A stretch of DNA of 64,000 nt from Hyphochytrium catenoides (GCA_900088475.1 FLMG01000369.1:31020-95019), one strand, 5' to 3'. Counted from the stretch's first letter, positions 3,230 to 24,689 are shown. Numbers and translations are program-made. The notes: a model not told the origin generated them from the letters alone.

Positions 3230-3314
3230 TTCCCTTCTCTCTGTGTCGCTCTCTCTCTTTGTCTGTGTGTCTCTCTCTCTCTCTCTGAGCCGCCTTCTTG
3301 GTCGCTCTCTCTCT

Positions 3315-3346
<32 letters not shown>

Positions 3347-3485
3347 CCTCTCTCATAATATGAGGTTGCTCTTTCTCTCTTATCCTCCGTCATCACTCTG
3401 CTGGCTTGCTCTCTGAACGCCTGCCATCGGTGCGNNNNNNNNNNNNNNNNNNNNNNNNTCTCTCTCTCTCTCTCTCTCTCTCTCC
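3230..3485. repeat. (CT)n microsatellite with an assembly gap, upstream of the 3715 gene
   Basis: CT runs flank the N-gap at 3435-3458. Confidence 0.85.
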
Positions 3486-3714: not shown

Positions 3715-4686
3715 ATGAAGGGCGAGACAATGAAGAAAACAAGCACCAGAAAGCGAAGAATGGCCACTAGATGCTGGAAACCTCGCTCTTCCTTCTTGCT
3801 TTTGCTCTTTTTCGCTCTCTCTCTATCCTCTCGTCATCTTCTTAGAAGTGCACAAGCTGCCTTGCGAGCCTCTCCTCCCAACGCCCGACGAGCTCCACTG
3901 AACGCTCTTACTACTGAGCCGAAGCAATTTGTAAAAACGAAGCCTGAGGCTGCTTCACTCCTGAGGAGAGTTCCGGAGGACCGCTCCGCCGGACAGGAGC
4001 AGAGTTCTCATCAGCTCTTGGAAGAGGCGAGCAATAGAGTTGTCTTGACAGCAAAAAACGCTGTTGAGGCGTTAAAAGTGTTGGCAGACATGAAGAAACA
4101 GTTCCGAGAGTCGAAGGGTGTCAAGAATCTAATCGCATGGAAGCGGGCGGTTGACAACGTAGCGGAAGTACGTCGTGAGTACGAAGCCGACGTGGCCAAA
4201 TGGAAACGTGTTAGGGATCGGCTACCCTCGGAGCAGAGGAAACAAGTTACGGAGGAGCTGGCTGGCAGAATGACAGGAATTCTTTCACGCCTGAGAACTA
4301 CGATAGACATCGAGTCTGGGGAAATTTCAAGTCACAGTGCAAACCTCCTCCGCGTTGCTTGGCATGGCGTTGTCACGAGAAGAACGGCTCTTATTAGCGC
4401 CTCAACACGCTCCACACAGAAGAAGAGGCAGCACCAAACGTCGAAGCGTCAGGAAGATAAAATTGCATGGGAACGGGCAGCCGAAGAAAAAGCTGAGGCC
4501 TTGAAGGAATACAATGCCGCTATGAAGCGCTGGAAAATTCTTAATGACCGGCTATTCTCGCAGAGGAAGGTGGAGAATAACAACAGAAGGCTTAACGGCA
4601 TCAGTGAGACTAACAGAATTATGAAAGCATTGATAAACTTGGACTACAGTCGAATAGGAGAAGATTGGAGCACTTTAACGCCATAG
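3715..4686 (+). CDS. Secreted helical-repeat orphan protein A (323 aa, 2 repeats)
   Basis: Intronless ORF. Basic leader (KKTSTRKRR), hydrophobic core (FLLLLFFALSLS), LRSAQA cleavage-like site. Two repeats 110 aa apart: AWKRAVDNVAEVRREY..RLPS and AWERAAEEKAEALKEY..RLFS. Clear paralogue of 7381-8655. Confidence 0.8.
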   Translation: MKGETMKKTSTRKRRMATRCWKPRSSFLLLLFFALSLSSRHLLRSAQAALRASPPNARRAPLNALTTEPKQFVKTKPEAASLLRRVPEDRSAGQEQSSHQLLEEASNRVVLTAKNAVEALKVLADMKKQFRESKGVKNLIAWKRAVDNVAEVRREYEADVAKWKRVRDRLPSEQRKQVTEELAGRMTGILSRLRTTIDIESGEISSHSANLLRVAWHGVVTRRTALISASTRSTQKKRQHQTSKRQEDKIAWERAAEEKAEALKEYNAAMKRWKILNDRLFSQRKVENNNRRLNGISETNRIMKALINLDYSRIGEDWSTLTP

Positions 4687-7380
4687 AAGCATGCTACTAT
4701 GTCGCTTGGCTGAGTGCGGAAGAGGAGAATGCGAAGGTGAGGCACTTTGTACAAGCGCGGCCAAAGTGACCGAAAGGAAGCGCACTCTGGGACATAATGC
4801 AGCCTCTCCGAAGCATCAAAGTGCTGTCAATGGTCAGCCACTACCAGGGACAGAAGACCCAAGACGAGCCCTAATAGCTGTAGACCTCTTATAGAATGGA
4901 GAAGTCAGATAGCAGCAGCAGCACTTTCAGCTGAGCTATCCAACCGCCTCGGCGATCGTTGAGGACAGCTACTAACCTGCTTGCAGCCATGCTCCAATGC
5001 CAAAGAGAAGGTTCTGTTGACGGTGATCCCAGTCATCAGACACTGTTTCTTCCTTGTCGAGTTCATGTTTCTTCTGTCTCTTCTCTCTGTGCTTCTACTT
5101 CTTATATATAGCAGAATATCATAACTGCTTTCTAGGTGAACGTTTGCGCCGCCTGACATTTCTACTTAATCGAAAGACTTTATCAACAGTTTCCAGGAGC
5201 ACTTCTTGGATCAGTGCTTTAGCTCTAACATAGAGAGTGCTTTTCTAGCTCTATGACAAAGAGAGAGAGCCTCAAACCTACTATGGACGCACGTTGGAGC
5301 GAAGCAAGAAGGTCAAAGCTATCGTGCACCTGCAAAAGTTGCTATAATCCAATAAGAAGGAAGAAGACAGTGTAGCTGGACGTAGTTTTAAAGGCCTCCA
5401 CGGAGTAGTAGGTGCAGCATATTATGGCCCAACATCTCTCCTAGGAACACTGATGGCTTGTGGCTCACAAGCTACAGGGCAACATCGAAGCACGCTGTCG
5501 TGATTCTATCTAATCACTGGTCCATTGGAGCTATGTAAATATCCCATGCCATTATCGTGTTCAGCAAGGACATCGTAACTCCTCCACTACCTCATCATTA
5601 GTCATCTGAAGCTGGACTAGAGCGAGCAGACAGCCGAAGGGTAGAGCATATCAAGAGGGTAGAGCATATCAGTAACAACGTCGGAGGACAAGGAACTTGA
5701 AGGACTCATAGTCTGCCCTCGTGAGGGTGGTGCTAACCAAGGTCAGAAATGCGTTCAGGACGTTCTCCTTCACATGCTTTCGAGGACTCTGGTTTGAAGT
5801 TTTTCGTGGGAGCTTCGGCGGGCCCAACCAGAAGCCTGGAGATTAACCGGTACGTGGTGATTGCTTCAAGTGCTGTTCAGGACACGGCTCTTGATGAATG
5901 TGTCCCATGGCGAACTCGCTGCCATCCAGACCCCTTCCTTATACAGCAGTACATGTCGCGCAACAGGGTCGATAGTCTTGGAGCAGCGAGCAATATGAAG
6001 AAGTATGAGGCTGCAGGGCTGCAGTTTGTCCAGATAATTTTTGAGTGTTTAGAGGTAGTTTGCCTTCTATCCTTGATTGCGTGCAGCGCTTCCTAAGAAG
6101 CTTCACGAAGATCACTCTGTATTCACTTGATGCTTTCCGGCATCGTGGTCGTCATGGTCTCGCTCTTATGATGGCTTGAATCGTTCACCCTATTAGAGAC
6201 TCCTTAGCCATCCATGGGAAACGATGCTCTTGAGATCCTAAAGTTATTCTTCTTTCGCCAGAGTTAGACCCTCCTTCTTCGCTGACTTGCCTGCTCGAGT
6301 GCGATGACATGATCATGCTCTTCATGCCTCTTTCCCGCCTCTTTCCCGTCCCTTTCTCCTATTTGTTACTGCCGAGGACATCAACTACTAGGAGGTTTCC
6401 TTTTCTTCAGTTGTTCTAATAATAATGTTGATCATAGACAGGGGTGGAAGGCGTTGATGAAGGGGACCAAGACTTCGTAACTCTTGCTGCTTCTTCTTCT
6501 CCTTCTCTTTTCTCTTTTAATCGAGTAGTAGTAGTAATGCATCATCGTGATATAATAAGTAAAAAACAAGCAACAGAACGTGAATAAACCTGGAAATAAG
6601 GGCCCTTTATTATTTTTATAAAGGGTTTTATAGAAATTAATTCTGAGTAGGCGATGGAAGTTTATAAGCAAGTTTGGTATACACCTTATTTTTAGGGTTA
6701 GGGTCATTAGCCTTTTAGACTACTGCTACTCGTACTGCTATGCTAGAATAGTGCTGTGTGTTTTGGTAGTGAGGGCATCTCTGCGGGCAGTCAGTAGTCA
6801 GTTCACTACTACCGTTGAAAGCCTTACTACTCGCTTTGGTTGAGGATCTTTCTTTCTCTCTTGCGGCTGCTGGCCGCTCCATTCAGCTTTTATGATTTCC
6901 TACCGTCGTCTTTATATAATCCGTATAGATCTAATGAGTCCAGCTAACATAATGGTTGGCGGGGTATCCTGCTCTTTCTCGCGCCTACGAAGGGCCAATG
7001 ACAGATCTTTGAAGCGGCGGAGACACTCCGACTCTACTACTAAGTATCTCTGTCTAGATAAGAGAGAGTTCGTGGCACTTCTCTCTTTCTCTGTGACTCC
7101 GTCTCTCTCTGTCTCTTCTCTAGCTCCATCTCTTTCTCGGTGCCTTTTCCTTCCATGCCTCGGAGGCCAAACGTATGGCTTCTGGCTTCATCACCGCAGG
7201 GAAGCCCCTGTTCCCATTGAGCAGACTCCTGTAGAGGCATACAGCTACGGCCCGCGGCTCTCCCGTCCCTCGGATTTCTTTGCATAGCACTGTCTTCTCC
7301 CCTGCTCTGTCAATTTGGAGGATAGTTCTATTATTAGCTTCATTCTTCAGAACTGACAGTGCCAAGAAGCGTCTACGATA

Positions 7381-8655
7381 ATGGCGTATCATAACGGAGA
7401 AGACGATAGAAGAATCAGAAAGGGAAGAGTTACGTTTAATTGGCGAAAACCTTGCCCTTCCCTTTTGCTTTTGCTCTTTCTTGCTCTCTCTCTCTCCCTT
7501 TTCGTCTCCCGGAATGCAGAAGCTACTCGTTCCTCTCGACTCCCAACAGGAGGTATTCACAGCAGCCCCAAAGTCCCGAAGGAGCCTGCAGCCGGTAAAC
7601 GTTGGAGCACTCAAGGAATAGACTCTGTAGGAAAGAAGCTGTCACAGGCCCCAAAGGCATTTCTGGCATTTCTGCGCACTCTTAAATCCAACAGAGAGCG
7701 CTCTCGGGCCATCAAAAGTGCCTGGGATGACCTTAACGAGAAAGGGTGGTCATCTCTAAGGACTTTAGAACTATTAGAAGAGAAGAAGGGACAGTTTTCA
7801 CAGTCCAAAGGTAAATATGAGCTAAGAGAATGGAAAGAGGCAGCCAGGAGAGCAGAAACAGCAGTTCAAGAATATGAGAATGCCGCGAACACCTTTAGAA
7901 GCCTTACTGAGCCGCTACCATCGAAGAAGAGAGAGGCTGTTGCTGACATGGCTGGTATTCTCAACAATATTGGGGAATGGAGAGCTAGGATTGAGAAACA
8001 CAATAGTGAGATCTTAAAAAGCTCCGAGGAGGAGGTTGCCCGGAACTGGAATGACCTTAGCGAGAAAGAGCACGCTGCCACCGTTGCCTTGAGGAATGCG
8101 GAAGAGAAATATGTGCGTCAAGATGCAGAGCAGATGAGTCTGGAGGAGCTAGAAGTATGGAAGAGGGCACTAGACGGAGTAAGAAAGGCACTCAAGGACT
8201 ATGAGGAAGCCGCGAATGCCTTGAAAGGCCTCGGTGATCTGCTGCCCTCGCAGAAGAAGGCCGTCGTCGAAGACAATGCCTTCATGGCTATCGAGAATAT
8301 TAAAATATGGAGGGCAAAGATAGAAGCAGATCATTGGCAAGCCTCAAGGTTCATCGCTGTCCTCAGATGGAAGCCCTATACTGAGGCTCGGACAGCGGTT
8401 GACGACGCAGTGAATTTTGCGGTTGAGAAGGCGGAACAGGCGTTAACAACAACAAAAAGTCCAGAGAAGCTCACAGAGTGGAGTGAGGCATACAAGAAAG
8501 CCATGGATGCACTAAAGGCCTATGAAAGAGCCGGACAAAAGCTCAACGACGAGCTTGCTCCTGAAATGGCTCCACCGTCGATGGCCGAAGTAAAGTCCAA
8601 CGTCGAGGTTGCCTTCGGAAGACTCAACGGGTTGCAACTTCAGATAGAGCTATGA
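7381..8655 (+). CDS. Secreted helical-repeat orphan protein B (424 aa, 3 repeats)
   Basis: Signal peptide (SLLLLLFLALSLSLFVSRNAEA) is homologous at DNA level to that of protein A. Three W-x13-Y repeats with Trp codons at 7831, 8158 and 8479 (109 and 107 aa apart). Confidence 0.85.
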   Translation: MAYHNGEDDRRIRKGRVTFNWRKPCPSLLLLLFLALSLSLFVSRNAEATRSSRLPTGGIHSSPKVPKEPAAGKRWSTQGIDSVGKKLSQAPKAFLAFLRTLKSNRERSRAIKSAWDDLNEKGWSSLRTLELLEEKKGQFSQSKGKYELREWKEAARRAETAVQEYENAANTFRSLTEPLPSKKREAVADMAGILNNIGEWRARIEKHNSEILKSSEEEVARNWNDLSEKEHAATVALRNAEEKYVRQDAEQMSLEELEVWKRALDGVRKALKDYEEAANALKGLGDLLPSQKKAVVEDNAFMAIENIKIWRAKIEADHWQASRFIAVLRWKPYTEARTAVDDAVNFAVEKAEQALTTTKSPEKLTEWSEAYKKAMDALKAYERAGQKLNDELAPEMAPPSMAEVKSNVEVAFGRLNGLQLQIEL

Positions 8656-11230
8656 CCTAAACCAGGGCGCTTCCAGTGTGATGGTTGTTGTTCGAACGCC
8701 TGGCAGACCTTTCATGGCAAAAGATCCGCGCGCTAGAAAGCAAGGTGAAGAGCATGACGAAGGTACGGAGAGAGTAATAGGCAAAGCGCTGAGACGATGC
8801 GGTCATCCTTTCGCGCTCATGGCCTGAAGATTGGCCCCTGGCTGTGGCATGTCATCACCTGCCTCAATATCCTGATGTCGTGCAATAATGACAGCCTCCT
8901 TCCACGCCTTTGTCCTCTTTCTGACCTCCAAAAGTGTTGAAGAGATTATTACATGTGGGCTTCACTCATCACGCGGTATATCTTCTGGGTTGCGTAGAGA
9001 GAGAGAGAGAGAGAAAGACAGAGGGATAGAGAGACCATAATGGAAACTGTTATTAGGAAAGGACAAGCAAGACCTTCAAATGGCGCGAGAGACAAGGAGT
9101 TAGTTGGACCGCAATGCCAGGACGCTTTATGAGATGAATAGATGGGTAGATAGAAAGAGCGGGGAGGACCAGACCAGAAAGCGCTATCGATCGAGCAGAC
9201 TAGGAGACAGAAAACTCTTGAACATCTACTGGGTCTATGGCAGTTGTAGCTGTAAGAAGAGCAGCATGGGCGTTTCCGGTAGGCGCACATTCTATTAGAT
9301 CTGTACGGTGAGGACGAGGACGTGCGTGACTAAGACCGTCAACAACCGCGCTCTGGCGTTGATGATGAGCACCGTGCTTCTTCCTCTTACGCCTGAGGTA
9401 CTACTGTCTCTACTGTTTACGTACTTCTAATCTCGACGGTTTGGATGATGCTTAGTGTCTCTGTGTCTAGCGTGTAAGTGCCCATTAGTATTCTATGACA
9501 TCTTTATTATGATGACCACGGACTGCGCAACAAGCTTGAGCATCCATCGCTTATTCTGGCTATCTAGGGCTGGTGGGAGTCAATGAGTCTTCTCTCCTGT
9601 TCTCTCCGCTTCGTTTCACTATATCTGGCGGATGGATCCGGTTCCTATCAGCCCTCCTCTGCTTGTCACTTTTTCTTTACGCTTCTATTCCTAGGCAGAC
9701 TCCTTCTTACTCATCTTCTAATCTCCATCAGTAGTGAGCAAGAGCCCTGATCAGTCGTCTTTTAATTGCATCATAATCCCGTGATAGACTTCAAAAATAA
9801 ACATCAGTGTCACGGCCGTCCTTGGCAAGAACCGCAGGCACCAAACGGGGCCAGCAGCAGCGTCTAGTTCTAAACGCGACAAATACGTGGTACACTCTAC
9901 TACTGATAACACATCCCAAGTAAACTCATACTCTTCCTCCACACAGAGTATCTGCCGCGCGTCTAAGATCCATCCTTGTCCGGGATACGGAACAGAGGCT
10001 AGGAATCTACGGAGAGTTGACCATCGTCATCAAACCGCCATTTACCGCTAAACACAGAGGACACGAGTAATAGGTTACTGGCTGGTACTGAATGGGATAA
10101 GGACACTGATACCACGGAGCAGGGAACAGAAGTTTATAATAATACTAGGAAACAGTGCGATGGAAACAGACAGGCAGTGCTGGTCACCGCTGCAGAGTCG
10201 TTGCTAGAACCAGCTAACCCCTGGTTCCTTTTTTTCGATAAAGTCCGTCTTCCAAGCCCAGACAGTAGCGTCCTCCTACTACTCAGTCTCCTACGACTGA
10301 ACTGCGTCATCGTTATTCTTAGTTTCTTATTGAGCAGGCTCCTTCTTGTCCAGAACGCGCCAGAATTTTTTTGCTCTATAAATCAAAGCGATAGCCTTCT
10401 AGCTTTCCCCTGCTGTTCCCATCTTTAGGGCTACTTTTTCCTCTCTTTTTTTTGTCCTATCTTCCTGCTTCTTTCCTCTGAAGACCTGGTGTCTTCCTCT
10501 GTTCACTGAGGTAGAACTACCTCCTGAGGTGTGCGCTGGTCCCGTTCCTTCTCATTCAGCCCTCGACCACGTCAAAAGACGAAGAAGACAGACCTAAAGT
10601 AACTGGCTTTCGGTCCCTTTCTAGCTCTGTTATCTTTGAGGATAGTTCTAGAAAAAAGGAGTTGAGTCTTTTTGTATCTCTCTCTGTCTCTCTCTCTCTG
10701 TCTCTCGCTGTCGCTCTCCTCCTCTCTCTGTCTCTCTGTCTCTCTCCACCTTGCTCGCTCAAGTAGCCCTCTTTCCCTCATTCTTTCGCTAAACTACTCC
10801 GAAGGAGGAGAGAAGAAGAACACGAGCAAGAGGTACTTGTAAGCCCTACAACGTCCTGGTCTACGCACTCGTTATCGGAAAGAGAGAAACCACTTTCTTC
10901 TTTTCTCTCTTCTCTCTCTTCTTTATCACTCGAGATGATCAAAGAAGGGACAAAGAGGAAGAGTCAAGAGACGGGAGAGAACATAGACAAAGCGTCCATT
11001 GTTCCACTGGTTCTTCTTATAGGCTTTCCCTTAGCAAATGCGCTCTGGTCTATCCGTAGAGGGCAGCGGCAGGTAGACATGTCTTTGACTTGGGCCAGCC
11101 TTGCTACATTCCATTCCACAATCTCCACTGATGCATTGAGGAGGCACAGGTGGGGAAGCGCCATCCACGACGAAGGTTTTGAGCAGAACTGCGACCGTCA
11201 TTGTGGCAGGGACACCTTGCTGTTAGTACT

Positions 11231-11899
11231 ATGACTCTGAGCTCAGCGCCGATGACCTCCAGAGGACCACGGAAGCAGAGTGTTCAAAGGGCTGGGCAGC
11301 TCTTCTTACGGCGGCGCTGCTTTTCCTATTCCTTCCTCCATCTTCTCTTTGTCGTCTCTCTTTTCTCTCTTCTAGGGCTGGAAAGTAGCGAAGCTTTGGG
11401 ATTTCCGCGAGTTTCGAAGGTGAAGGCCACCTTGACAAAGAGCTTGAGTTCACTGAAGCACAACGGCGAAGCGTGGCTCTATCGGAAGGGAATTAAGAAG
11501 CCAAAGATACCGGCCGGGACACAACTCTACGATAACGTGCTATCCGATGGGCTGTGGAAAAAGGCTAAGGACGGCCTTGAGGAGGCGGATTCTTTGATGA
11601 CTACCTCAGAACAGGCTGCGAAAGAGACACTCAGAAACGTGAGGTCTAAACTGCGAGCCACGAAGACCGATCTGAACAAAGCATTCGAGGAAGCGATAGC
11701 AGGCATAAAAGCGACGTCCCGTGAAGACAGACAGCTGCAGATTGCCCAGATCAATCACAGATACGATATCCTCAATAAGAAGCATAAGGATCTACAGAGT
11801 AGGTTGATATTCTACCAGCGCCTTGAACTTGGGAGGAAATTCGGACTAGTTCCCGGGTCGGATGGCGCAAACTTAAGAGGCGCGAACATGCGTGAATAA
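11231..11899 (+). CDS. Secreted helical orphan protein D (~222 aa)
   Basis: ATG at 11231 (alternative 11252). Basic leader RRRCF, hydrophobic core FLHLLFVVSLFSLLGL, ESSEA cleavage-like site, Lys/Ala/Glu-rich helical body. Paralogue at 14100-14694. Confidence 0.8.
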   Translation: MTLSSAPMTSRGPRKQSVQRAGQLFLRRRCFSYSFLHLLFVVSLFSLLGLESSEALGFPRVSKVKATLTKSLSSLKHNGEAWLYRKGIKKPKIPAGTQLYDNVLSDGLWKKAKDGLEEADSLMTTSEQAAKETLRNVRSKLRATKTDLNKAFEEAIAGIKATSREDRQLQIAQINHRYDILNKKHKDLQSRLIFYQRLELGRKFGLVPGSDGANLRGANMRE

Positions 11900-12136
11900 A
11901 TGACGGTGGTCGACGATTTCAGCGCAATGTTTTGAGCTCCGCACAAAGTTCACACTGCTGACCTCACTCCCGAGGATGTGCATGACATAAGACCGTCGTC
12001 ATCCTCCGCTCTCAGGCGGTGATGATGAGCATTGTGCCTTTCTTTGCCTGATATACCTGAGCTGCTACCGTCTTCTCTGCAGTTTCCCTACTACTAATCT
12101 CACAGTTTGGATGATGCTTGGTGCGTCTCTGTCTAT

Positions 12137-12542
12137 CATGTAGAAACCCATTAATAATCTATGATATCTCTATGATGACCACGCGGACGTTGCAAATCTA
12201 GGGCTGGTGGAAGTTGGATGGACCGCCTTATGGGGCTCGGAACGGTGGAATATCCAGGGAGGGATATTAGGTTTTCCTGGCGCGGTTGTAGGATGGGGCT
12301 GACCTCCTCCGTCACTTCCAGATTTCCTCGGTCAGCCTCAGCCTCCGCCGCCGGCTCAAAATCTAGACACAGCGGCAACGGATAGAAGAAGCACAGCTGA
12401 CTAGACCTATGCGCTGCCGCAGAACAGTCAAGTAGCATGTAAGAACCCATTAATAATCCATGATATCTCTATGATGACCACGCGGACGTTGCAAATCTAG
12501 GGCTGGTGGAAGTTGGATGGACCGCCTTATGATCCTCGGAAC
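12137..12542 (+). repeat. ~105-bp near-identical direct repeat pair (12137-12243 and 12436-12542), period 299 bp
   Basis: ATGATATCTCTATGATGACCACGCGGACGTTGCAAATCTAGGGCTGGTGGAAGTTGGATGGACCGCCTTATG occurs twice. Confidence 0.9.
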
Positions 12543-13769
12543 CCCTGCTATGGCGAGGGAATTGGTAGCCTTCTTCCCGTGTTCCTTCATCATGATAAGC
12601 CAATGAGCCTTGCCTTCTGTGCTCTTCAGATTCTTCTTTCCACTATGTCTGGCGGATGGATCCGGTTCCTGTCAGCCCTCCTCTGCTTGTCAGTTTGCTT
12701 TTTTTATGCTTCTATTCCTAGATCTCTTCTTACTCATCTTCTAATATCCATCAGTAGACCATGGGCCCTGAGCAGCTCGTCTTCCGTTGGCATCATAATC
12801 TCGTGACAGAGCTACAAAAAGATGTCACTGTCTTGGCAAGGACCGCCGGCACCTAGCGGAGCCAGCAGCAGCGTCTAAACGCGACAAGTATGCTCTCAGT
12901 GCCTGAGATATGCAGAGCTCACACTCGTCTTTCTTACTGCTTGCGACCGCGGTCTTCTGCTCAAGCCTACTGCTAATGATCTTGACCTTTCTAGTAGGAA
13001 CATGGTACCCCTACTGCTAACACTAGCCAAGAGAAAGCTCTCCCTACAGAGTAGGAGAAGCATCTAGCTACTGCTCGTCCAAGATCCATTATTGTCCGCG
13101 ATTCAAAACAGCGGAGGAACCTAGAGAACCGAGAGTTGCCCATCATCAAAATAACAGCGTTATTGCCGCTAAAAGACGGACCAGGAACATGAAAGAAGAC
13201 TAGTTGAACCTAGGAGACTGTGTGTCATAGAAACAGCTATAGAACCAGACAGGCAGTACCTTCTCACCGCTGCAGAGTCGTTGCTAGATCAGGGAAACCG
13301 TGGTTCCTCTTCTAAAGGTCCGTCTTCCAAGCCCAGATCCTACCCTCGCTGCTCGTCAGCGCGAAGGGCTGTAGAGTTTTTAGTCATAGTGTCATAGTAG
13401 AGCGGTAGAGCCAGTAGAAGTACTGATATGACACGCGGGGTTGGGCACGACCGTCAGGGTGGACGGCGTTATCGTCATACATTTTTTTAGCCAGGTCCGT
13501 CTTGTCTGGAGCGAGCGAGAACTACCGTTATTGTTCTATCTTTCCCCTACTTTCTTAGCCCTCGAAAGACCTACTGCCTGCCTCGGTCTCGTAGTTCTAC
13601 AGCTGTAGGAACAGAACGACTGAGTGACGGTTCTTGGTTCTTGGTCGTCCTCCTCTCCCTTCGCTTTCATCCCCAATAAACGGCAGAAAACAGACCTTTT
13701 CTTTTATAAAATGGCTGACATTTATTCCCATCTCTGGCTTTGGCTTTGTGAATAATATGATTCGTTTTC

Positions 13770-13825
<56 letters not shown>

Positions 13826-14099
13826 CCCTTCTCTCATTCTCTTCTATCTCTTGTTCGCCTCGCCTACTCGCCCGCTCGTCCTCCATTTTGCCCCTGTTCC
13901 CCTTGTTTCACGCTTTATAACAGGATTGGCGGCAAAAGCGGTAGACTGTCCATGACCTGATTGACCTAGCTCCACATTCTCCATTGAGACACAGAAGGGT
14001 CAGCGCGAGTCACAAAAGCTTTTGGAGTCCGCGACGGTCAGCGTAAAACGGGAACTCTGCTTGCTAGTCCTGATCCTGACGGCCCTTGGCACAGCTGAA

Positions 14100-14694
14100 A
14101 TGGCGCCGATAGGGGAGCGCCGCTTTTCCTCTTTACGTCTCCGCTTTCTCTTCTCGGTCTCTCTTCTATCTCTTCTGTGGCTAGGAAGCAGCGAAGCATG
14201 GAAAGTGCCGAGAGTATCGTTGAAGAAGTTGAAACCCAGTTTGTCAAAAGAGTTGGGAGTCGGTGAAGCACAAGAGCGAAACTTGGCTCTATCGGAAGGA
14301 AATTTGGAAGGCAAAAACAAAGGCCACGAGGCCGGAGACGGGCAAGTTGCCATCAGATGGAGTGTGGGAAGAGGCCTCCAAGGGCCTTAATGTTGCGGAA
14401 ATATCGTTGAAACAGGCGTACGACGGATATGAAGCCGCGATCAAGAGTGGCGGCGCCAAAGAGCTAGAAGGGATCAGAAGCTGGACTAACAAGCTCCAGG
14501 ACGCGAAATCTCAACTGGACGCCACGAAGAAAGCTTTGGAGGGGACATTCGAGACAAAGATGAGAGATATACCCGCGACGACGTTACCTGAAGATAGACA
14601 GCAGGCGATTGCCGAGCTCAAGCGCGGATACAATGTTCAGAATGCAAGGCATAAGAAGCTAGTTAGGACTGTCTGGAAGCATACTGGGCGCTAA
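14100..14694 (+). pseudogene. Frameshifted paralogue (E) of secreted protein D
   Basis: ATG 14100 gives MAPIGERRFSSLRLRFLFSVSLLSLLWLGSSEAWKVPRVS, aligning with the D N-terminus. Homology continues in another frame (KHKSETWLYRK..SDGVWEEA vs KHNGEAWLYRK..SDGLWKKA). Removing one base near the A run at 14246-14249 restores one ORF. Confidence 0.75.
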
Positions 14695-15459
14695 ACATCT
14701 ATGGACTTATGAGGCACGCCATGTTCAAGTAGATGAAGCGTTCAACAAACGACCACTATCCTTCCTGAGCTCATTCGTCGTCGGAGGCCAAAGCTGCCAC
14801 TAAAGAATCACAGATAACACCTTCCCCCCAAACACAAAGGCTTCGCAGCTCTCCTCTCTTCTTCTTCTTCTTCTACTTCTCTTTGCTGGTTCTGGTTAGG
14901 AGACCTCGTACTGGATGGTCTTCCTCTCACTCTTCTTATCAATGACTCTCTACTTATCATCCAATCGATGCCGGGTTACCAGGTCGTCTGTCTGGGAATA
15001 GCAGATGAAGAAGTATGAACGTTCGGTGTAAGGCTGCAGGTTGTCTCCGCTTGTTGGGAGCTTTTTATCAGCAGGGAGGAGCTATGATGATGCCTCAAGG
15101 GTTCGATTGTGTGCGGCGGCTCTTGAGGCCTCAATGTGATCGCTCTAAACTTGTTGCCGCCCGGCATCATGGCCCAAGGGGTCTGGCCTCTGTATAGTTC
15201 TTCTACGCCTTCACTCCAGAGTCTATTGCTGCCATTTATGAATAACATGTGCTGTAGACGCTCAAGCATAGTCTCTTCTATTGCTTGCCTTCTCGAACGT
15301 GATGATGGTCTCGGCTCTTCTCCTTCTTCTCCGACTTTTCCTCTTCTTAGTGCTGAGATATCCAATAAAGATTCTTCCTTTTTATAGAAGAAAGACGATG
15401 ACTGAGAGAAGGGTTAGTGGTGATGGAGAGATCAAGACTTCTGTTGCGCTTGTTGTCTC

Positions 15460-15680
15460 TTCTTCTCCGCCTTCTTCTTCTTCTTCTCTTTCTTTTATCT
15501 CTTTCTTCTTCTCCCACTTCCTTCTTCTCTGTCTCCTGTCTTCCTTCTTCTTCTCTCCTTCTTCCTCTTCTCCTTCTTCTCTTTTCTTCTTCTCTTTCTT
15601 CTTCTCCTTCTTCTTCTCCTTCTTCCGCTCTTTCTTCTTCTCTTTCTTCTGCTCTTTCTTCTTCTCTTTCTTCTTCTCTT
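15460..15680. repeat. (TTC)n / (TTCTTCTTCTCT)n low-complexity repeat
   Basis: Directly visible 3- and 12-bp periodic pyrimidine tract. Confidence 0.85.
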
Positions 15681-16712
15681 TGAGTAGTAGTAGAAAGACC
15701 AGTAAATCTGCTAAATTAATACAATCGAAAAGAAGCCTGCCAACAACAAAACTAACAGACTCAAGGCTCTCCCGTTGGGAAGAAGGCCTCAAACGGCTTC
15801 GCTGGACTTGTTTGTTTTGGTTAGTCCTTCATTGTCGTTGATGTTATCTTCTTATGTTACTTCCTGAGCAAACAGTAGTGATGTAGCAGTAGTAGTAGTG
15901 TAGATCATGGTCATGGTTCTGGTTAGTCTAGTGCATGGTTCAACACTGCTTCTAAGTAGAAAGCATGTTTATTATTGTCATTCATGGACCCTGAAGAACC
16001 TTCCGAATGGCGAGAGGATTCTTCTGCTTCGCTTCCATGGACCGCCCGTGTGAATAGAACTACTCGGGTTCTGGGACGTGGTCAACAGCGTGGTCTACAG
16101 AGACTCCGAGCCAGGGAGAGTCCGTGCAGCTCTTTCCTAAGAATAGAACAAAAGGGAAAGGGGCTACCTGGGGCCTTGTTTGCCTCGTTCTCTGATATCC
16201 TGGTCTAACCTGGATACTAAACTTGATAAGTAGTTTGCGGTGAGAGAGGAGAGGAAACTGAGAGCCAGCGACCTAGCTGAGGAGGAATGCAACTGCACAC
16301 GGATGGCTGGACACCGGGAACACTACTGCTAGATAGCGCGATGCGATGGACAGCGGAGACTCGACGAAGAAAGAGATGGAGAAAGAGAGAGAGACCGATA
16401 GCTGCTAGAATCCTCATCTGGTACAGAAGAGAGGGAGTAGAAAGTGAGAGGAGACAGAACAGTGGGACGGAGACTCATAGAAAGAGAGACATTTGGGGCC
16501 ACAAAGAGCAAAATGAAAGAGACCTGCTGTCCAACCTGAACGAACGCGGCGTATATTCTCTACGACGCATTGTCGATTAGGAGCCGGCTCCTAGCCAGTG
16601 AAGGAGGACGGAGCCAAGCGGCCACTACTCCATCAGAAACGCCCCTTCTGAGACTTCAGAAGTGAAGGACACGACAATAGGGGATTCTCTCCTACTCATT
16701 TCGTCCTAGACT

Positions 16713-18113
16713 ATGGAGTGGCAAGGTCCAAAAAGGATGTCGACGAGGAAGAGACGTGGACGAAGTGTCGCACGACATGGACAGAGGAGATGTTGCTCTC
16801 CTACCCTTCCTCCTCTTCTCTCCTCTCTTCTCATTTTCCTCTGCCTCTTCGCTCTTCTCCTGCTTAGAAGCACGGAAGTATATGGCATGCGGAAATCTCT
16901 TTCTCCGACCCGAGAAGGAGGCGCCAGAGCAGAGCCAGGTACCACCACAACCGCGACAATAACTAGAGCTGGCTCATTAGCAAGGGCGAAGAGTCCGAGA
17001 AGAAAGGCTGTCGGACCAGAAACTGTTCCCCTAAGAGTTGAACCGACGGTTGACGAGACAATAGCTCTCCTGGAAACGAAGGGAAACGAGGCTCAACGCT
17101 CACCAAACCCAGAGACGTTCAGGGACTGGGGTGAGGCGATTGGGAACGCTGCACAACGGCTTAGTAGTACGGAGAGCAGGCTTCCAGAGACAACGATTGA
17201 CGAACTTAGGGCCAAGATTGAAGCGCAGGCAGAGGGATTTTTATCCATGTCAACTGCGAGGATAGAGCTCGCCAAGATAACCGATGGACAGATCCTGGCA
17301 TGGCTAAGAGCCGTCCCAGATTCATGGCCCGATATAGCTTGGAACGACCTTTTAGCCTGGGAGAAGTCTCTTCAGAGTGCGTACATGGAGCTAGCGGACG
17401 CTAAGACAGCGTTGAATGAGCTCGCAGCGACGGTACGGATCTTCCTACGAGAGGATGTGAAGGGTAGTCGGGGACTATCCTCGAGGATCACATCAGCCAC
17501 GAACAGAGTGACCCAGGTTCAGACTGGGTTAAGAAGGACCGCCATTGGGATCTTAGGACTATCAATGATGGCACTCTTCCGAATAGAGCAGGGGGCCAAG
17601 CAGTCGATGACTCGTCTGCAAGCGCAGATGGCACTGGTGCGGAACTCTGCTAGCGCTTCGGAGGCGACGATGAGGGACCTGGAGACCGCCTTCGAAGCGG
17701 CGTACGCAGAGCTGATCAGGGCCAAGACGAGCTTAGCTACCTTTACCGAGATGACAGGCACAACGCCGTGGAAGGAGCTCTACCACCAGCACCATCAAAC
17801 CTGGAGGATAGGAGTAGTCAGGAACAACATTGGCCATATGGAAAAGGAAATACGAGCGACAGCACTTGGAATCCTAAGGATTGCACGGGAGTTCGCTGAG
17901 GTGAACGAAGGAGCAGTGCTGGAAGCTATGACCCTGGGAGAACAGAATAGGGCACAGCCTGCACAGATGCTGAGAGCGGACACGCATGATGAACCGAAGG
18001 CAAAGGATCTGGCAATGTCAAGCCTCCAGATGGTCACAACTATCTTGCAAAGGATGACAGAGCGCATAAGAGAGAGATTTTTGCCGGCAACCAGCGTGAT
18101 CAGTTCAAGGTAG
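16713..18113 (+). CDS. Secreted helical-repeat orphan protein C (466 aa)
   Basis: Basic leader STRKRRGR..RRCC, hydrophobic core LLSSLLIFLCLFALLLL, RSTEVYG. Internal repeat with 107-aa period (AYMELADAKTAL..RRTAIGIL vs AYAELIRAKTSL..RATALGIL). SPNPETFRDWGEA and LRAKIEA resemble protein B (SPEKLTEWSEA, WRAKIEA). Confidence 0.8.
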   Translation: MEWQGPKRMSTRKRRGRSVARHGQRRCCSPTLPPLLSSLLIFLCLFALLLLRSTEVYGMRKSLSPTREGGARAEPGTTTTATITRAGSLARAKSPRRKAVGPETVPLRVEPTVDETIALLETKGNEAQRSPNPETFRDWGEAIGNAAQRLSSTESRLPETTIDELRAKIEAQAEGFLSMSTARIELAKITDGQILAWLRAVPDSWPDIAWNDLLAWEKSLQSAYMELADAKTALNELAATVRIFLREDVKGSRGLSSRITSATNRVTQVQTGLRRTAIGILGLSMMALFRIEQGAKQSMTRLQAQMALVRNSASASEATMRDLETAFEAAYAELIRAKTSLATFTEMTGTTPWKELYHQHHQTWRIGVVRNNIGHMEKEIRATALGILRIAREFAEVNEGAVLEAMTLGEQNRAQPAQMLRADTHDEPKAKDLAMSSLQMVTTILQRMTERIRERFLPATSVISSR

Positions 18114-18291
18114 GGAACAATGTGCCTATGTTAGGTCAGGTGTTACTATCTTACAAAGCTGCCATCAAAGATCAGCAGCCAATAGAGAGACCAGGAAGGA
18201 AGAAAGATCAATAATATACAAAGCTGCACTCTCTTCCGGTTTTCTCTTTCTCTCTCCCTTCCTCCCTCTTAAGAATGTCTCTTGCTGCGTC

Positions 18292-20604
18292 CTAGTGGAT
18301 CAGATAGGCTAGGCCGATACGCTGTCCTCCTCTCTCGTCTCCACCTCGTCGATGCGCGGAAGAGGAGATAGGAGGCACCTCAGAACGTGGAGCAGGAAGA
18401 GGGTGAGTGTATGAAGAGCGAGAAAGAGAAGCCACAGAGAGAGGCGCAAGGATAAGCCAGCCCATGAAGATGGCCAAGGAGCAGATGTATGGGATAGGAA
18501 TCCCTAGCGCCAAACGGAGCAAGAGGAGAGAGAGAACGATAAGCGGAGGAAGCAGGGCACAAGCGAGAGCTAGCACGTGCTTTCCTCTCTTCTTCAATAA
18601 AACCAACGGGTCTCTTTCTCTCGCTTCCGCCGGCCTGCTCTCTCTGCTGCGGCCTTCTCTACGACTGAGAAAGGCTCCGATTCTGTCGTTGCCTAGCTCT
18701 CTCCTCTCTCCTTCAAACACCGCTGAGAGCATATGCCGAAAGGCCCGTGCGACTTTTGAAAGGTAGAGAAGAAGAACAGAGGAGAGAGGAGAGAAGACGA
18801 CCCACCAAGGCAGAGAGTGATCCTCCATGTCCATCTTATAGACCAACAGAGCAGAGGATAGAAGGACAGACAGAGCAGGTGCAACCACCTTCATTTGCTG
18901 TTGCAATGAGACAAAAGAGAGATGAGAGAAAAGATGCATGGCCAAGCCCATGTATGTCCAGAGAGGGATGCAGGTGACACAGAGAGAAGAGAGAAGCCCG
19001 TCCAGATACATCGACAGAAGAAGAGGAAAGATGTCTACCAGTCCGCAGACCACCGCCATGAACACGATTTCTATAGGAAACTCTCTGTTCCAAAAGAAGA
19101 TACGAAAGAGCTGTGACGAAGAAAAGAATCTCTCTCTTCTTCCGTTCCTCTCTCTCTCTCTGTCGCTGGTTGACAGGCCACCAGCAGAGGAAGGCCGAGC
19201 GAAGAGAAGGAGGTAGATTGCCACTGCTCCTTTGACGGCAGCAAAAGCCAGGGGCATGAGAAGGACCGAATGAAAGGGAGAGAAAACCATGAACCAAGAG
19301 AGAGAGACATCTCCGTCCAGTTTGAGGCAGAGAAGAACTGGGAAGAGTATGACCATTGCAGAGAGGGAGAGACACGCAGAGAAGCCCACAAAAGCATCCA
19401 ATGTCCTCTTGTTCCAACAGCGAAGTACTCTTCCTTTCTTTGCTCTTTCAAGTCTCTCGTCTCTCTCTCTCCTCTCAGCCTCCAGACTCAAGAGCTCCTC
19501 TCTGCATCTTCTGTCTGCTTCTTTCGCTGCGATGTAGAAACGAAGACCATCTGATAGAGAGAGAGAAGGATTGAGGCGGCGCAGATGGTGCTGGTGCAGG
19601 AGCGAGAGAGAAGAAAACTCCGTTATGTTGAGAAAGTTCCATAGTGAGTCCATTTTGGAGAGACTTCTTAGGCGCCTGGGCAAGGAGAAGAGAAAGAGGA
19701 GTGTTATTCAGAGGATCAGAGACAAGAGGGGAGAGAGAGAGTAAAGTAGAGAGAGAGCCGGACAGAGAGAGAGAGAAAGAGAGAGAGAGAGATTGAAAGA
19801 AGAAGAGATGAATTGAGAGAGATTGTGACGAAGGAGGACTGGGGACAGAGAGCTGGAGAGGCCAAAAGAAAGAGGGAGAGCAATAAGAAAGAGGAGAGAG
19901 GTTGAGAGGGTGATGACGAGAGAGCAGAAAAGCGGGGGGAGAGAGAGAGCGCTTGGGTGCAACAAGGGAGAAAAGAAAGAGGCCTGCGCGTTATCATCCA
20001 GACCCGACGGCGTTCCTTTGACTCACCTGGACACAGCACCGGTTCTAGCGACAGTAGGACCATCCAAGCTCCTCAGGATTTCCAGCAGAAGATCTTCGGA
20101 GAGAGAGGTGAGCCTGTCAGGTTTGGAGAGAGAGGCTTCCTCTTTCTTGCTGTGCATCTCTCTTCCTTTCTTCTTCTCCTCCAAAAGAAAGTCTTTGGAT
20201 GGAGAGGTGAGCCTGTCACCTATGGAGAGAGAGGTTTCCTCTATCCTATTACTCTCTTTCTCTCTTCCTTTCTTATCTTGGACCCAGATTGTCTCTTCAG
20301 CGGCAGCGCAACTTGAAAGGAGAACTTCTCGTGTCATCTCCCGTCTCACAATGCGCTCTTTCTCTCTCTTTCCTTCTTCTGTTGACGAGATGGTGGAGGC
20401 AGCCTCTTCTTCCATTGTTGGCTCCTCGCTTTGGAAGCGCTGGACGAACGTAGATATCTCTTTCTTTTTGTCTTCCTCCGTGGTTTCTGGGGCCTGTTCT
20501 AGATGTCTTCCTTCTACCTTCTCAGTACGATGATGCGGGCAAACAGAGTGTTCTGGTTCTCTTTCTCTCTCTTCTCCTTCTCTCTTCCTTCTTTGGTCTC
20601 TCAT
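18292..20604 (-). CDS. F-box + TMEM185/FAM11 (transmembrane Fragile-X-F)-like multipass membrane protein, 2 exons; start codon uncertain
   Basis: Intron 20026-19676 (AG|GTGAGT ... CCCAG|G) joins LTSLSEDLLLEILRSLDGPTVARTGAVSR to RLRSLSKMDSLW in frame, a typical F-box. The C-terminal part has repeated LLCLKLDG..SWFMVFSPF / LLVYKMD..PWWVVFSPL TM units typical of TMEM185. Confidence 0.8.
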
Positions 20605-22874: not shown

Positions 22875-24689
22875 CTATTCTTCTCCACTCTCCTGCTTGC
22901 GTAGCAGTCTTCTCGTCGTCGTTCCCCCTGCAGGACTTATGATATCTGGATTTTGCTTGATAAACTCTGAGATGTCGATGGCGCCAAGGTCGGCTCCTGC
23001 ATCATCCACTCCGCTGCTATCGCCAGCTAGAGGATCACCACCGAAGTTCAAGCCGACCACAGACAAAGCGACAACTGTGAGTCCCGCTAGCAGCAACCCC
23101 GTAACTCCTGCGCCAATCAAGCCCGCCCGTAATGGCGTCAGCCACAGTCTCTTCAGCCTGTTTGCCTGTTTTTCCAGCAGACTGAGCACTGCTAGATTGC
23201 CTCGAGCATAGGTGATGGCATCAGTGGCGTCTTGAAATCCTTGGTAAGTCTTTTGTAAATTCTCTAGAGCGGGGTTATCCGTAATCTTTCCGTCCAGTTG
23301 CTGTTTCTCCTGGTTGAGCTTAGACTCATAGTCGACCTTCAGCCTTTGCTGTATGGCTTCCTCAGTCTTGGCAGATAAGGCCTTTTTAATCATGCGTTTG
23401 AGTGTAATGTCCACGCCACGTGCGGATGATAGTCGCTTCTGCGCCTTACGCATCTCCTTGCGTACATTTGCTGTCCACTCTTTTGGATTGACATCTCCCT
23501 CTGCACCGCGGCTGGTCATCGCCGTCAAGTCTTTCACAGCCTGCCTGTAACCCTCCAGTGCAGAATAGTCCCTCCCCACGCGATCATCTTTGTTAGCTTG
23601 TTCCTTGGTTAGTCCATTTAAGAAGTCCTTAAAGCTGTTCACGTTGTGTTGGTCCGCCTGAGGAAGATGATTTAACGTACTGGGATCCTTGGCTTTGCTG
23701 CGTTCCACATGCCCCACGAGTGCAGCCACCATCGGATCATCTAGTTCCCACTGAGCTTGTTTCAGACGGGCATCCACAGAACTCAGCTTTCTGTCGTAAC
23801 CTCTGATCGTGGTAAGAAGCTTCATGAATTGGTCGTAGACATCCTTGCCAATCTCTTTGCGCAACTTTTGCACCTCTGAAAGAAACCGCACTTGTTCTTT
23901 ACGGGCAATCGTAATAACGTCCTCATCTGCCTTCTTCGCTCCCTTAAGGGCTTTCTCGGCTCTGGTCTTTGCATTCGCCTCTTTCCCTGGAATGGCTGCC
24001 CCAGCAGCTAACTCTTCCTTCAAGCTTACAGAGAGTCCGTCTGTGAGCGGATGGCTGTTCGCACTTTGCAGTGGTACATCGTTCGGAACATCGGCTGCTG
24101 AAATCTCCCCGCCCTCATCGGATCGAGCTAGAGAAGAAGAGATGGTAGCTTCCTCAGCTACTTGTGGAGCCACAGGAGAAGCGGAAGTTTCACCAGAGGA
24201 TGGTGGGGACTCTTTGGTTTGAGTTGTTGACTTCTTCTTGAGAAATGTTCCGAAGCTGTGAAGCACCTGAGACAACCTGAGGCTGCCAGCGTCCATAACT
24301 CGGGACACCAAAGAACCCTTTGACCTTGCAGTTCTCCATTGTTCCTCAAGGTATGCGTTATGAGCTAATTTTGCCCTAGTCATCTCGTCTTTGGCCAGCT
24401 GTACTGCGTCGGCTAAGCTGTGAGGTTTATCATGCGCCTTGTGCCAGAATTTTAGCTTCGGGGTCCACTTCCGTAGCCCCAACCATTTCCTTCCACCCGC
24501 CTCAGCTTGATGGTTTCGACCCAGGTGGCTGTTGGCTGGATCAGCTGCCGATTTACCTCCTTTTTTACTAAAAAATCCTGCCCTTGCCCCTGGAAGAAGA
24601 GGGATAGTACATAGAAGGAACAAGAGACAACAGGCTAAAACCGGAAGAGAGAGCCAGGGATGACGCTTCCTGAAGACAGGAAGAGCCAT
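22875..24689 (-). CDS. Orphan signal peptide + coiled coil + C-terminal TM protein F (604 aa)
   Basis: Signal peptide ending PGARA. Long K/E/A/Q helical region. Gly-rich TM GLIGAGVTGLLLAGLTVVALSVVGL. Tail DISEFIKQNPDII..RRLLR. Confidence 0.85.
   Translation of the reverse strand: MALPVFRKRHPWLSLPVLACCLLFLLCTIPLLPGARAGFFSKKGGKSAADPANSHLGRNHQAEAGGRKWLGLRKWTPKLKFWHKAHDKPHSLADAVQLAKDEMTRAKLAHNAYLEEQWRTARSKGSLVSRVMDAGSLRLSQVLHSFGTFLKKKSTTQTKESPPSSGETSASPVAPQVAEEATISSSLARSDEGGEISAADVPNDVPLQSANSHPLTDGLSVSLKEELAAGAAIPGKEANAKTRAEKALKGAKKADEDVITIARKEQVRFLSEVQKLRKEIGKDVYDQFMKLLTTIRGYDRKLSSVDARLKQAQWELDDPMVAALVGHVERSKAKDPSTLNHLPQADQHNVNSFKDFLNGLTKEQANKDDRVGRDYSALEGYRQAVKDLTAMTSRGAEGDVNPKEWTANVRKEMRKAQKRLSSARGVDITLKRMIKKALSAKTEEAIQQRLKVDYESKLNQEKQQLDGKITDNPALENLQKTYQGFQDATDAITYARGNLAVLSLLEKQANRLKRLWLTPLRAGLIGAGVTGLLLAGLTVVALSVVGLNFGGDPLAGDSSGVDDAGADLGAIDISEFIKQNPDIISPAGGTTTRRLLRKQESGEE

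What the first reader, a model, noticed from the sequence alone, without database searches (positions are those of the whole stretch)
3715..18113. Tandem array of five secreted proteins built from a ~107-110-aa helical repeat (W-x13-Y..LPS) with variable copy number
Seen in sequence: five co-oriented intronless genes (3715, 7381, 11231, 14100, 16713). A and B contain five units with Trp and Tyr exactly 14 residues apart (WKRAVDNVAEVRREY, WERAAEEKAEALKEY, WKEAARRAETAVQEY, WKRALDGVRKALKDY, WSEAYKKAMDALKAY), three of them followed by LPS and one by LFS. Periods are 110, 109 and 107 aa. C has a 107-aa period and shares SPxPE..W.EA and RAKIEA. E looks like a single unit (W..~39 aa..W..LP). I recognise no known domain. 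Inference: a lineage-specific, rapidly diversifying family of helical-bundle secreted proteins. They could be effectors or toxins (modular logic analogous to, but not shown homologous with, oomycete WY/LWY effectors) or extrusome/matrix structural proteins. This is the best candidate for an undescribed system in the window.
Basis: partly seen in the sequence, partly recalled or inferred. Interest (0 to 1): 0.82.

Follow-up and report, generated by a model that had tools for sequence, protein, structure and literature searches.

The report
Orphan secreted helical-repeat gene array
Two neighbouring genes, and probably a third, in an unidentified eukaryote encode signal-peptide proteins made of two or three ~109-residue three-helix units that resemble spectrin repeats in layout but match no known family; the other two genes of the "array" are a separate, recently duplicated pair.

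Summary
The five co-oriented ORFs and the quoted motifs are real. A (3715-4686) and B (7381-8655) are paralogues with 2 and 3 copies of a 107-110-aa unit. The self-repeat is far above shuffles, and A vs B gives E=4e-12. W-x13-Y is explained: W and Y sit two heptads apart at core positions of one amphipathic helix. AlphaFold models (pLDDT 74 and 86) give three long helices per unit, the third running on into the next unit. That is the spectrin-repeat layout, but Foldseek, Pfam and PDB searches give no significant hit to spectrin, TPR or WY/LWY. The ORF at 16713 has its own 3 x 107-aa repeat, but its link to A/B is not significant (E=0.02-0.07). The ORFs at 11231 and 14100 are a tandem-duplicated pair with no detectable repeat or relation to A/B; the second carries one frameshift. 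A profile search of 1.84 billion proteins found only spurious TPR hits. This absence is weak evidence, because the host lineage is unsampled: its nitrate reductase is at most 39% identical to anything. A relative in a Logan assembly keeps the 16713 ORF intact. Best reading: lineage-restricted secretory rod proteins. Their function is inferred only.

The parts
3715..4686 (+). Gene A: 323 aa. N-terminal basic stretch plus hydrophobic segment (aa 1-48), a linker, then 2 repeat units (4003-4332 and 4333-4683).
   Evidence: ORF. Units, (each unit iE ~1e-43 to the unit HMM, which was built from these same units). Self-offset 110 scores 115 vs shuffle maximum 40. One hydrophobic peak; mature part has no Cys; pI 10.4.
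7381..8655 (+). Gene B: 424 aa. Signal-like segment (aa 1-48), a ~50-aa low-confidence linker, then 3 repeat units (7696-8022, 8023-8343, 8344-8652).
   Evidence: AlphaFold models. A vs B 29% identity, E=4e-12. Signal-coding DNA is 76% identical to A over 88 nt (3741-3828 vs 7410-7497).
16713..18113 (+). Gene E: 466 aa. Signal-like segment (aa 1-58), an S/T/R-rich linker, then 3 units of 107 aa (17031-17351, 17352-17672, 17673-17993). Possible far-diverged relative of A/B.
   Evidence: Offset-107 self-score 64 vs shuffle maximum 44. Unit alignment A4. Weak link to A/B only. A 98% identical intact orthologue, P0129/L001, has no indels.
11231..11899 (+). Gene C: 222 aa. Signal-like segment (aa 1-55) plus a short basic helical region. 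No internal repeat. Paralogue of D, not demonstrably related to A/B.
14100..14694 (+). Gene D: tandem duplicate of C, broken by one frameshift relative to C. It is either a pseudogene or an assembly error. Its two frames were analysed apart and never joined.
9315..11899 (+). Duplicated segment 1: about 2 kb of upstream non-coding DNA plus gene C.
   Evidence: Collinear with 11971-14694. Non-coding blocks are 76-88% identical; the coding part is 59-74%.
11971..14694 (+). Duplicated segment 2: about 2 kb of upstream non-coding DNA plus gene D. It contains a further local 110-nt duplication (12134-12243 and 12433-12542, 94% identical).

Best explanation
A and B are paralogous, lineage-restricted proteins of the secretory pathway. 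After an N-terminal signal (or signal-anchor) segment and a disordered linker, the mature part is predicted to form an elongated rod. The rod consists of 2 (A) or 3 (B) tandem ~109-aa three-helix coiled-coil units. Helix 3 of each unit continues as helix 1 of the next, which is the layout of spectrin-type repeats.

The W-x13-Y signature is two 'a' positions, 14 residues apart, of a four-heptad amphipathic helix. Its 'd' positions are mostly Ala, which suggests tight antiparallel packing. LPS is the turn that ends this helix.

E is a second rod protein with the same period (3 x 107 aa) and is probably a far-diverged member. C and D are a different, recently duplicated pair. The locus grows by tandem gene duplication and by gain or loss of units.

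Shown: the repeats, the paralogy, the heptad pattern, the predicted helices, and the lack of any known relatives.

Inferred: cleavage and secretion, the bundle packing, and the function. I take the function to be a length-variable scaffold or partner-binding rod with fast-changing surfaces, acting in a secretory compartment, on the cell surface or outside the cell.
For: Repeats and paralogy.

Heptad pattern: hydrophobic periodicity is 3.5 in the W/Y helix (0 of 500 shuffles reach it) and 3.6 in helix 1 (1 of 500). Core-type residues fill columns 47, 54, 61, 68, 75 and 50/51, 57/58, 64/65, 71.

AlphaFold: B has pLDDT 73.6, with 80-93 in the repeats. Its helices are 105-142, 145-176, 181-194/197-245, 254-282, 290-356, 361-391 and 401-423. 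The two-unit model has pLDDT 85.9 and pTM 0.72.

Foldseek: spectrin-type repeats recur among the natural repeat-rod hits, with the lowest rmsd values listed: plectin SR5-6 (probability 0.96-0.98), beta2-spectrin R14-16 and nesprin-2. The spectrin repeat is 106 aa, three antiparallel helices joined by a helical linker, with conserved Trp (PMC4305312). A Trp is also kept in helix 1 of 4 of the 5 units.

Secretory entry: every protein has a single N-terminal hydrophobic segment, followed within about 10 residues by small residues at positions -3 and -1. The n-regions are basic and the mature parts contain no Cys.

Real genes: the relative L001 keeps E as 466 codons with no indel. E is 1.07% diverged, against 3.45% plus indels in the upstream DNA. 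All 10 residue changes lie after aa 106.
Against: No structural match reaches E<=0.001, and TM-scores are at most 0.47.

No Spectrin Pfam hit appears even at E<=10 per unit.

No signal-peptide predictor, RNA data or proteomics were available. The h-regions of 16-20 residues and the n-regions of 20-35 residues would also fit uncleaved signal anchors.

E's link to A/B is not significant.

The organism and its lifestyle are unknown, so the function is inference only.
Confidence: 0.45

Rival explanations
1. They are host-delivered effectors of a parasite or pathogen. In this reading they are modular helical repeat proteins whose surfaces diversify under host pressure, working like oomycete (L)WY effectors.
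For: The proteins have signal-like N-termini and Cys-free mature parts, sit in a tandem array and vary in unit number. The paralogues are only 17-34% identical per unit, while the signal-coding DNA is kept at 76%. The C/D coding DNA is less conserved than its upstream non-coding blocks. E between strains shows 10 non-synonymous and 5 synonymous changes, a rough dN/dS of about 0.6. The logic of modular repeat effectors is described in PMC11799481.
Against: No RXLR-, PEXEL- or TEXEL-like motif could be read after the signal segments. There is no Pfam RXLR/WY hit and no WY effector among the Foldseek hits. The unit has three long helices, not a WY or five-helix LWY fold. The window encodes an assimilatory nitrate reductase, which obligate parasites often lack (the last point is my own knowledge). 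The neighbouring non-family ORF shows a similar non-synonymous to synonymous ratio (11:7), so there is no special selection signal.
Confidence: 0.17
2. They are organelle-targeted proteins of an alga with a complex plastid. The signal segment plus the S/T/R/K-rich, acid-poor stretch behind it would form a bipartite presequence. The basic helical repeats would act inside the organelle, for example by binding nucleic acid or membranes.
For: The 40 residues after the signal segment in A, B and E are rich in Ser/Thr and Arg/Lys and hold only 2-3 acidic residues (read). The mature parts have pI 8.7-10.6. The first 106 residues of E are invariant between the two strains while the rest changes. The nitrate reductase is compatible with a phototroph.
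Against: There is no evidence that the organism has a plastid. An aromatic or Leu residue right after the predicted cleavage site occurs only in C and D. The unit is unlike PPR, OPR, HPR or TPR repeats, which are 34-40 aa two-helix motifs; the TPR-protein hits cover only a 25-aa stretch. Whole mature proteins being basic weakens the transit-peptide argument.
Confidence: 0.13
3. The five genes form one family whose members have diverged beyond detection by sequence, so the reader's single-family view is right.
For: All five are co-oriented, evenly spaced and preceded by pyrimidine microsatellites. All have the same N-terminal design, are Cys-free and are basic. E shares the 107-aa period, a W...LP arrangement placed in register by hhalign, and a hexapeptide with B.
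Against: HMM and profile-profile tests fail for C, D and E. C has no internal repeat. The shared hexapeptide is not in the same position within the unit. F, G and H nearby share the same general design but are clearly other families.
Confidence: 0.2
4. The ORFs are chance open frames or dead genes.
For: D carries a frameshift. There is no expression evidence. The codon-usage test discriminates poorly: control ORFs also score positive in frame 0.
Against: The ORFs run 222-466 codons in ~50% GC DNA. Similarity between paralogues and between units is at the protein level. E is intact, indel-free and less diverged than its flanks in a relative.
Confidence: 0.03

Closest known systems
Spectrin-type repeats (spectrin, plectin/plakin, nesprin, dystrophin)
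   Same: The period is 107-110 aa, against 106. Each unit has three long antiparallel helices, and the last helix is predicted to run on into the first helix of the next unit. There is a heptad core pattern and conserved Trp residues (PMC4305312). Spectrin-type repeats recur among the natural repeat-rod hits in Foldseek, with the lowest rmsd values listed.
   Different: There is no sequence-level match (Pfam; PDB sequences). Foldseek E-values are 0.13-0.77 and TM-scores at most 0.47. The invariant Trp lies at the start of helix 2 and is paired with a Tyr two heptads later. These proteins carry secretory signals, whereas spectrin-family proteins are cytoplasmic (my own knowledge).
Oomycete WY / LWY tandem-repeat effectors
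   Same: Signal peptide, tandem helical modules, conserved buried W and Y, low sequence identity between modules, and variable module number (PMC11799481).
   Different: LWY is a five-helix fold with an L motif, and WY is a short bundle (PMC11799481). Here each ~109-aa unit has three 30-38-residue helices. There is no RXLR/EER motif, no Pfam hit and no WY effector among the Foldseek top 50.
TPR repeats
   Same: A local A-x3-Y-x2-A helix motif makes the unit profile hit bacterial TPR proteins many times.
   Different: The hits cover only about 25 of 109 profile positions and add up over many TPR copies. TPR is a 34-aa two-helix motif. No Pfam TPR model is hit.
STAT coiled-coil domain and designed helical bundles
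   Same: These are the best Foldseek E-values (0.019-0.04): long antiparallel helices.
   Different: The hits are not significant, with rmsd 18-35 A and TM-scores at most 0.29. This is generic long-helix similarity.

Membership tests
Spectrin repeat (Pfam PF00435 type) | Sequence match to the family profile | tested here: not met
   No Spectrin hit for whole proteins at E<=1 or for single units at E<=10.
Spectrin repeat (Pfam PF00435 type) | A unit of about 106 aa made of three antiparallel helices, joined to the next unit by a continuous helix | tested here: inconclusive
   The predicted helices and the 107-110-aa period fit. Foldseek to spectrin, plectin and nesprin gives only E=0.13-0.77 and TM<=0.47. 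The coordinates could not be inspected.
Spectrin repeat (Pfam PF00435 type) | Conserved Trp in helix A | tested here: inconclusive
   Trp is present at alignment column 10 (helix 1) in 4 of 5 units. Equivalence to the spectrin position could not be shown without a structural superposition.
Oomycete WY/LWY effectors | WY (short bundle) or LWY (five-helix) fold with W and Y buried | tested here: not met
   Three long helices per unit. No WY/LWY structure in the Foldseek top 50. The fold definition is from PMC11799481.
Oomycete WY/LWY effectors | RXLR(-EER) motif after the signal peptide, or a Pfam RXLR/WY profile match | tested here: not met
   No such motif could be read in A-E. No Pfam hit.
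TPR | Tandem 34-aa helix-turn-helix motifs matching TPR profiles | tested here: not met
   The period is 107-110 aa and the helices are 30-38 residues long. No Pfam TPR hit. The TPR-protein hits cover a 25-aa stretch only.
Cleaved-signal secretory proteins | N-terminal h-region followed by small residues at -3 and -1 | tested here: met
   Read directly in A, B, C, D and E (and in F and G). There is a single N-terminal hydrophobic peak. No dedicated predictor was available, and an uncleaved signal anchor is not excluded.
   E scores E=0.069; C and D get no hit. hhalign gives E=0.021, 0.17 and 0.21.

The most novel reading that the evidence does not exclude
A previously undescribed family of spectrin-like three-helix repeat rods that has moved into the secretory pathway of an unsampled eukaryotic lineage. 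It sits in a 35-kb cluster of at least eight Cys-free, basic, signal-bearing helical proteins (A-E plus F, G and H). Together these could be the cargo or matrix of a lineage-specific secretory organelle, or a set of surface or host-facing proteins.
Probability: 0.25. Interest if true: 0.6.

Novelty: new variant of a known kind. Interest (0 to 1): 0.4.

Why it matters
If the prediction holds, this is a spectrin-like rod module used behind a secretory signal, a place where such repeats are hardly known. It would also be a clean example of a repeat family that diversifies by unit and gene duplication while keeping its targeting region. The practical value is modest: it gives a defined profile (alignments A1 and A4) for annotating an otherwise dark part of the proteome of an unsampled eukaryote. 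It also shows that the 'absence of homologues' here reflects database sampling rather than proven uniqueness.

Tried and rejected
- Pfam on all five proteins and on single units: nothing consistent.
- Word search with B: no hit, not even to itself.
- Exact look-ups of seven window proteins: none on record.
- Profile search of 1.84 billion representatives with A1: 8 hits. The four I inspected with the strongest scores are TPR proteins hit on a 25-aa stretch. One is a eukaryote-like repeat protein (P0006) with a different unit. Three were not inspected. I rejected the hits as relatives.
- Two JGI metagenome scans, with B and with E: nothing.
- PDB sequence searches with A1, E and A2: nothing.
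- hhalign of the C/D alignment against F and G: nothing.
- A search for further exons or family members between the genes found only a non-coding duplicated segment.
- Identifying the organism: no rRNA or tRNA in the window. The nitrate reductase is equidistant (35-39%) from chytrid, plant, fungal and algal enzymes. The run accession SRR28521185 is not in the paper library.
- The codon-usage frame test was uninformative, because control ORFs behave alike.
- dN/dS between paralogues was not attempted: at 29-37% residue identity the synonymous sites are saturated.
The two frames of D and the two ORFs of the LanC-like gene were searched apart, and the joined step was left out.
Full report
OBSERVATION

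The window looks eukaryotic. ORFs are sparse, there are CT/GA microsatellites and four N-gaps, and no tRNA or Rfam hit was found.

Five + strand ORFs start at 3715 (A, 323 aa), 7381 (B, 424 aa), 11231 (C, 222 aa), 14100 (D) and 16713 (E, 466 aa). All five quoted W-x13-Y strings are present at aa 142 and 252 of A and aa 151, 260 and 367 of B. The periods are 110, 109 and 107 aa. Three units are followed by LPS and one by LFS.

The bare motif is not rare: the six-frame translation holds 29 matches, and B has a fourth that is out of register. The units themselves are significantly alike. Ungapped self-offset scores are 115 (A) and 91/62 (B), against shuffle maxima of 40-46. A vs B gives E=4e-12 in two registers. 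Units are 17-34% identical to one another, and there is no clear one-to-one correspondence between the units of A and those of B.

WHICH GENES BELONG

An HMM of the five A/B units, searched against all stop-to-stop frames of the window, finds only A and B. E is the best other frame at E=0.069, and C and D do not appear. Profile-profile tests give E=0.021 (A1 vs E; the Trp and the Leu-Pro are placed in register, but the probability is 2%), 0.17 (A1 vs C/D) and 0.21 (A1 vs the E units).

E does have its own internal repeat at offset 107 (score 64 vs shuffle maximum 44). It therefore has three units (A4) with the same period as A/B, and it shares the hexapeptide RAKIEA with B, though at a different place in the unit.

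C and D are paralogues of each other (37-40% identity) without an internal repeat. D has one frameshift relative to C. Its two frames were analysed apart and were not joined.

HOW THE LOCUS AROSE

C and D lie in two collinear segments of about 2.7 kb, 9315-11899 and 11971-14694. Blocks of the upstream non-coding DNA are 76-88% identical, whereas the coding part is 59-74% identical. This is a tandem duplication in which the coding part has changed at least as fast as its flank.

Between A and B, only the signal-coding stretch keeps DNA similarity (76% over 88 nt). Each gene is preceded by a pyrimidine microsatellite on the coding strand.

ANATOMY OF THE UNIT

In the unit alignment the invariant residues are W, A, Y, L and I. 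Core-type residues fill columns 47, 54, 61, 68, 75 and 50/51, 57/58, 64/65, 71. That is a heptad pattern with W and Y at 'a' positions two heptads apart and mostly Ala at 'd'. The hydrophobic periodicity is 3.5 (0 of 500 shuffles reach it) in this helix and 3.6 (1 of 500) in the preceding helix. This explains W-x13-Y.

AlphaFold2 of B, with A as the only other row, gives pLDDT 73.6 overall and 80-93 in the repeats. The helices are 105-142, 145-176, 181-194/197-245, 254-282, 290-356, 361-391 and 401-423. A two-unit fragment gives pLDDT 85.9 and pTM 0.72. Each period thus holds one helix of about 30 residues (the W/Y helix, ended by the LPS turn) and one long helix of about 65 residues that spans the unit boundary. 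This is the arrangement of spectrin-type repeats, which are 106 aa, have three antiparallel helices joined by a helical linker, and carry conserved Trp (PMC4305312). A second Trp is kept in helix 1 of 4 of the 5 units.

COMPARISON WITH KNOWN FOLDS AND FAMILIES

Foldseek against the PDB gives no match at E<=0.001. The best E-values belong to designed bundles and to the STAT coiled-coil domain. Spectrin-type repeats recur among the natural repeat-rod hits, with the lowest rmsd values listed: plectin SR5-6 (probability 0.96-0.98, TM up to 0.47), beta2-spectrin R14-16 and nesprin-2. No WY/LWY effector appears, and the LWY fold has five helices (PMC11799481).

Pfam gives nothing for whole proteins or for single units. 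PDB sequence searches give nothing.

The exhaustive profile search of 1.84 billion representatives returned 8 hits. The four I inspected with the strongest scores are bacterial TPR proteins matched many times on a 25-residue stretch (the A-x3-Y-x2-A helix motif). One is an unrelated eukaryote-like repeat protein. Three were not inspected. None of those inspected is a relative.

WHAT THE ABSENCE OF RELATIVES MEANS

The window's own proteins are not in the collections. The nitrate reductase in the same window is only 35-39% identical to its best hits, which come from chytrids, plants, fungi and algae alike. The host lineage is therefore unsampled, and 'no homologue' says little.

There is one exception. 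E has a 98% identical counterpart (P0129) on a 3.5-kb Logan contig from run SRR28521185. That contig is 97.9% identical to window 16302-19161. The E ORF is intact over all 466 codons with no indel. It shows 15 substitutions (5 synonymous, 10 non-synonymous) and 1.07% divergence, against 3.45% plus indels upstream. All 10 residue changes fall after residue 106. E is thus a maintained gene with a conserved targeting region and a more freely changing body. The counts are small, and the neighbouring ORF shows a similar ratio, so no claim of positive selection is made.

TARGETING

A-E each have one N-terminal hydrophobic segment of 13-20 residues. So do three further ORFs: F (22875-24689, - strand), G (27582-28769, - strand) and H (33827-35266, + strand). 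The segment follows a long basic stretch and is followed by small residues at positions -3 and -1. The mature parts contain no Cys, and A-G are basic.

This fits cleaved signal peptides, or type II signal anchors. Either way the helical part faces the lumen or the outside. No predictor was available.

The residues after the signal are rich in Ser/Thr and Arg/Lys and poor in acidic residues. This would also fit a bipartite organelle presequence; I keep that as a rival.

VERDICT

There is a real, undescribed helical repeat family (A and B, probably E) with spectrin-like predicted architecture behind secretory signals. Next to it lies an unrelated duplicated pair (C, D).

The most likely working model is a length-variable rod or scaffold with fast-changing surfaces in a secretory compartment or at the cell surface. 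Effector and organelle readings remain open.

It is a new sequence family of a known architectural kind. Interest is moderate, because orphan secreted families are common in unsampled protists and the function is not shown.

PROCEDURAL NOTES

The joined step for D and for the two-ORF LanC-like gene was left out. No step needed referral.

Noticed in passing
window 22875-24689 (-), 27582-28769 (-), 33827-35266 (+): Three further signal-bearing, Cys-free proteins (F, G, H) that also have a C-terminal transmembrane segment. F and G share the membrane segment and a tail motif (I-D-I-S/T-E-x-x-K/R-x-N-P-D...), at 34% identity and E=6e-11. H carries a shorter form of the motif before its membrane segment and has a Pro/Thr-rich mucin-like region. 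With A-E this makes at least eight secretory-type genes in 35 kb. None has a Pfam hit.
   Followed up: partly
window 51802-55137 (+): A single-ORF assimilatory nitrate reductase (Mo-cofactor, cytochrome b5 and FAD/NAD domains) with long low-complexity insertions. It is at most 39% identical to any enzyme in the collection, and its best hits are spread over chytrids, plants, fungi and algae. The host lineage is unsampled.
   Followed up: partly
window 9315-10262 and 11971-13337: About 1 kb of non-coding DNA is shared at 72-88% identity downstream of B and downstream of C. Stops in all frames show it is not coding. It is part of the 2.7-kb tandem duplication that made C and D. The second copy holds a further 110-nt local duplication (12134-12243 and 12433-12542, 94%).
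   Followed up: yes
L001 (Logan SRR28521185 contig, 3530 nt) vs window 15645-19161: A close relative (97.9% identity over 2.86 kb) exists in a public sequencing run. Upstream of about 16300 the similarity drops to 76% with many gaps, so the intergenic DNA turns over quickly. The run could not be linked to an organism.
   Followed up: partly
window 38905-40515 (-) and 40765-42510 (-): Two adjacent ORFs with two-component signalling domains. One has REC-HisKA-HATPase-REC; the other has PAS-HisKA-HATPase with a Ser-rich tail. They may be one large hybrid histidine kinase gene or two genes.
   Followed up: no
window 36246-36995 (+) and 37359-38300 (+): A LanC-like protein is split over two ORFs that match successive parts of the Pfam profile. 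There is probably one intron of about 360 nt, so this genome does have introns. The two ORFs were scanned apart and not joined.
   Followed up: no
window 3236-3484, 10677-10746, 13774-13851, 15458-15681, and others: (CT)n or (TCT)n microsatellites lie on the coding strand a few hundred bases upstream of each gene of the array, and (GA)n tracts lie elsewhere. They may be promoter-associated pyrimidine tracts.
   Followed up: no
window 58799-60695 (-): Overlapping ORFs with a reverse-transcriptase-like look, probably a degraded retroelement. The one ORF tested had no Pfam hit at E<=0.01.
   Followed up: no
window 18292-19683 (-): A multi-pass membrane protein ORF with a weak, sub-threshold match to Tmemb_185A. 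It is conserved in the Logan relative, with 7 synonymous and 11 non-synonymous changes in 290 codons.
   Followed up: partly
window 3435-3458, 27977-28030, 35883-35898, 62651-62724: Runs of N (assembly gaps). One lies inside ORF G and one lies just upstream of gene A.
   Followed up: no
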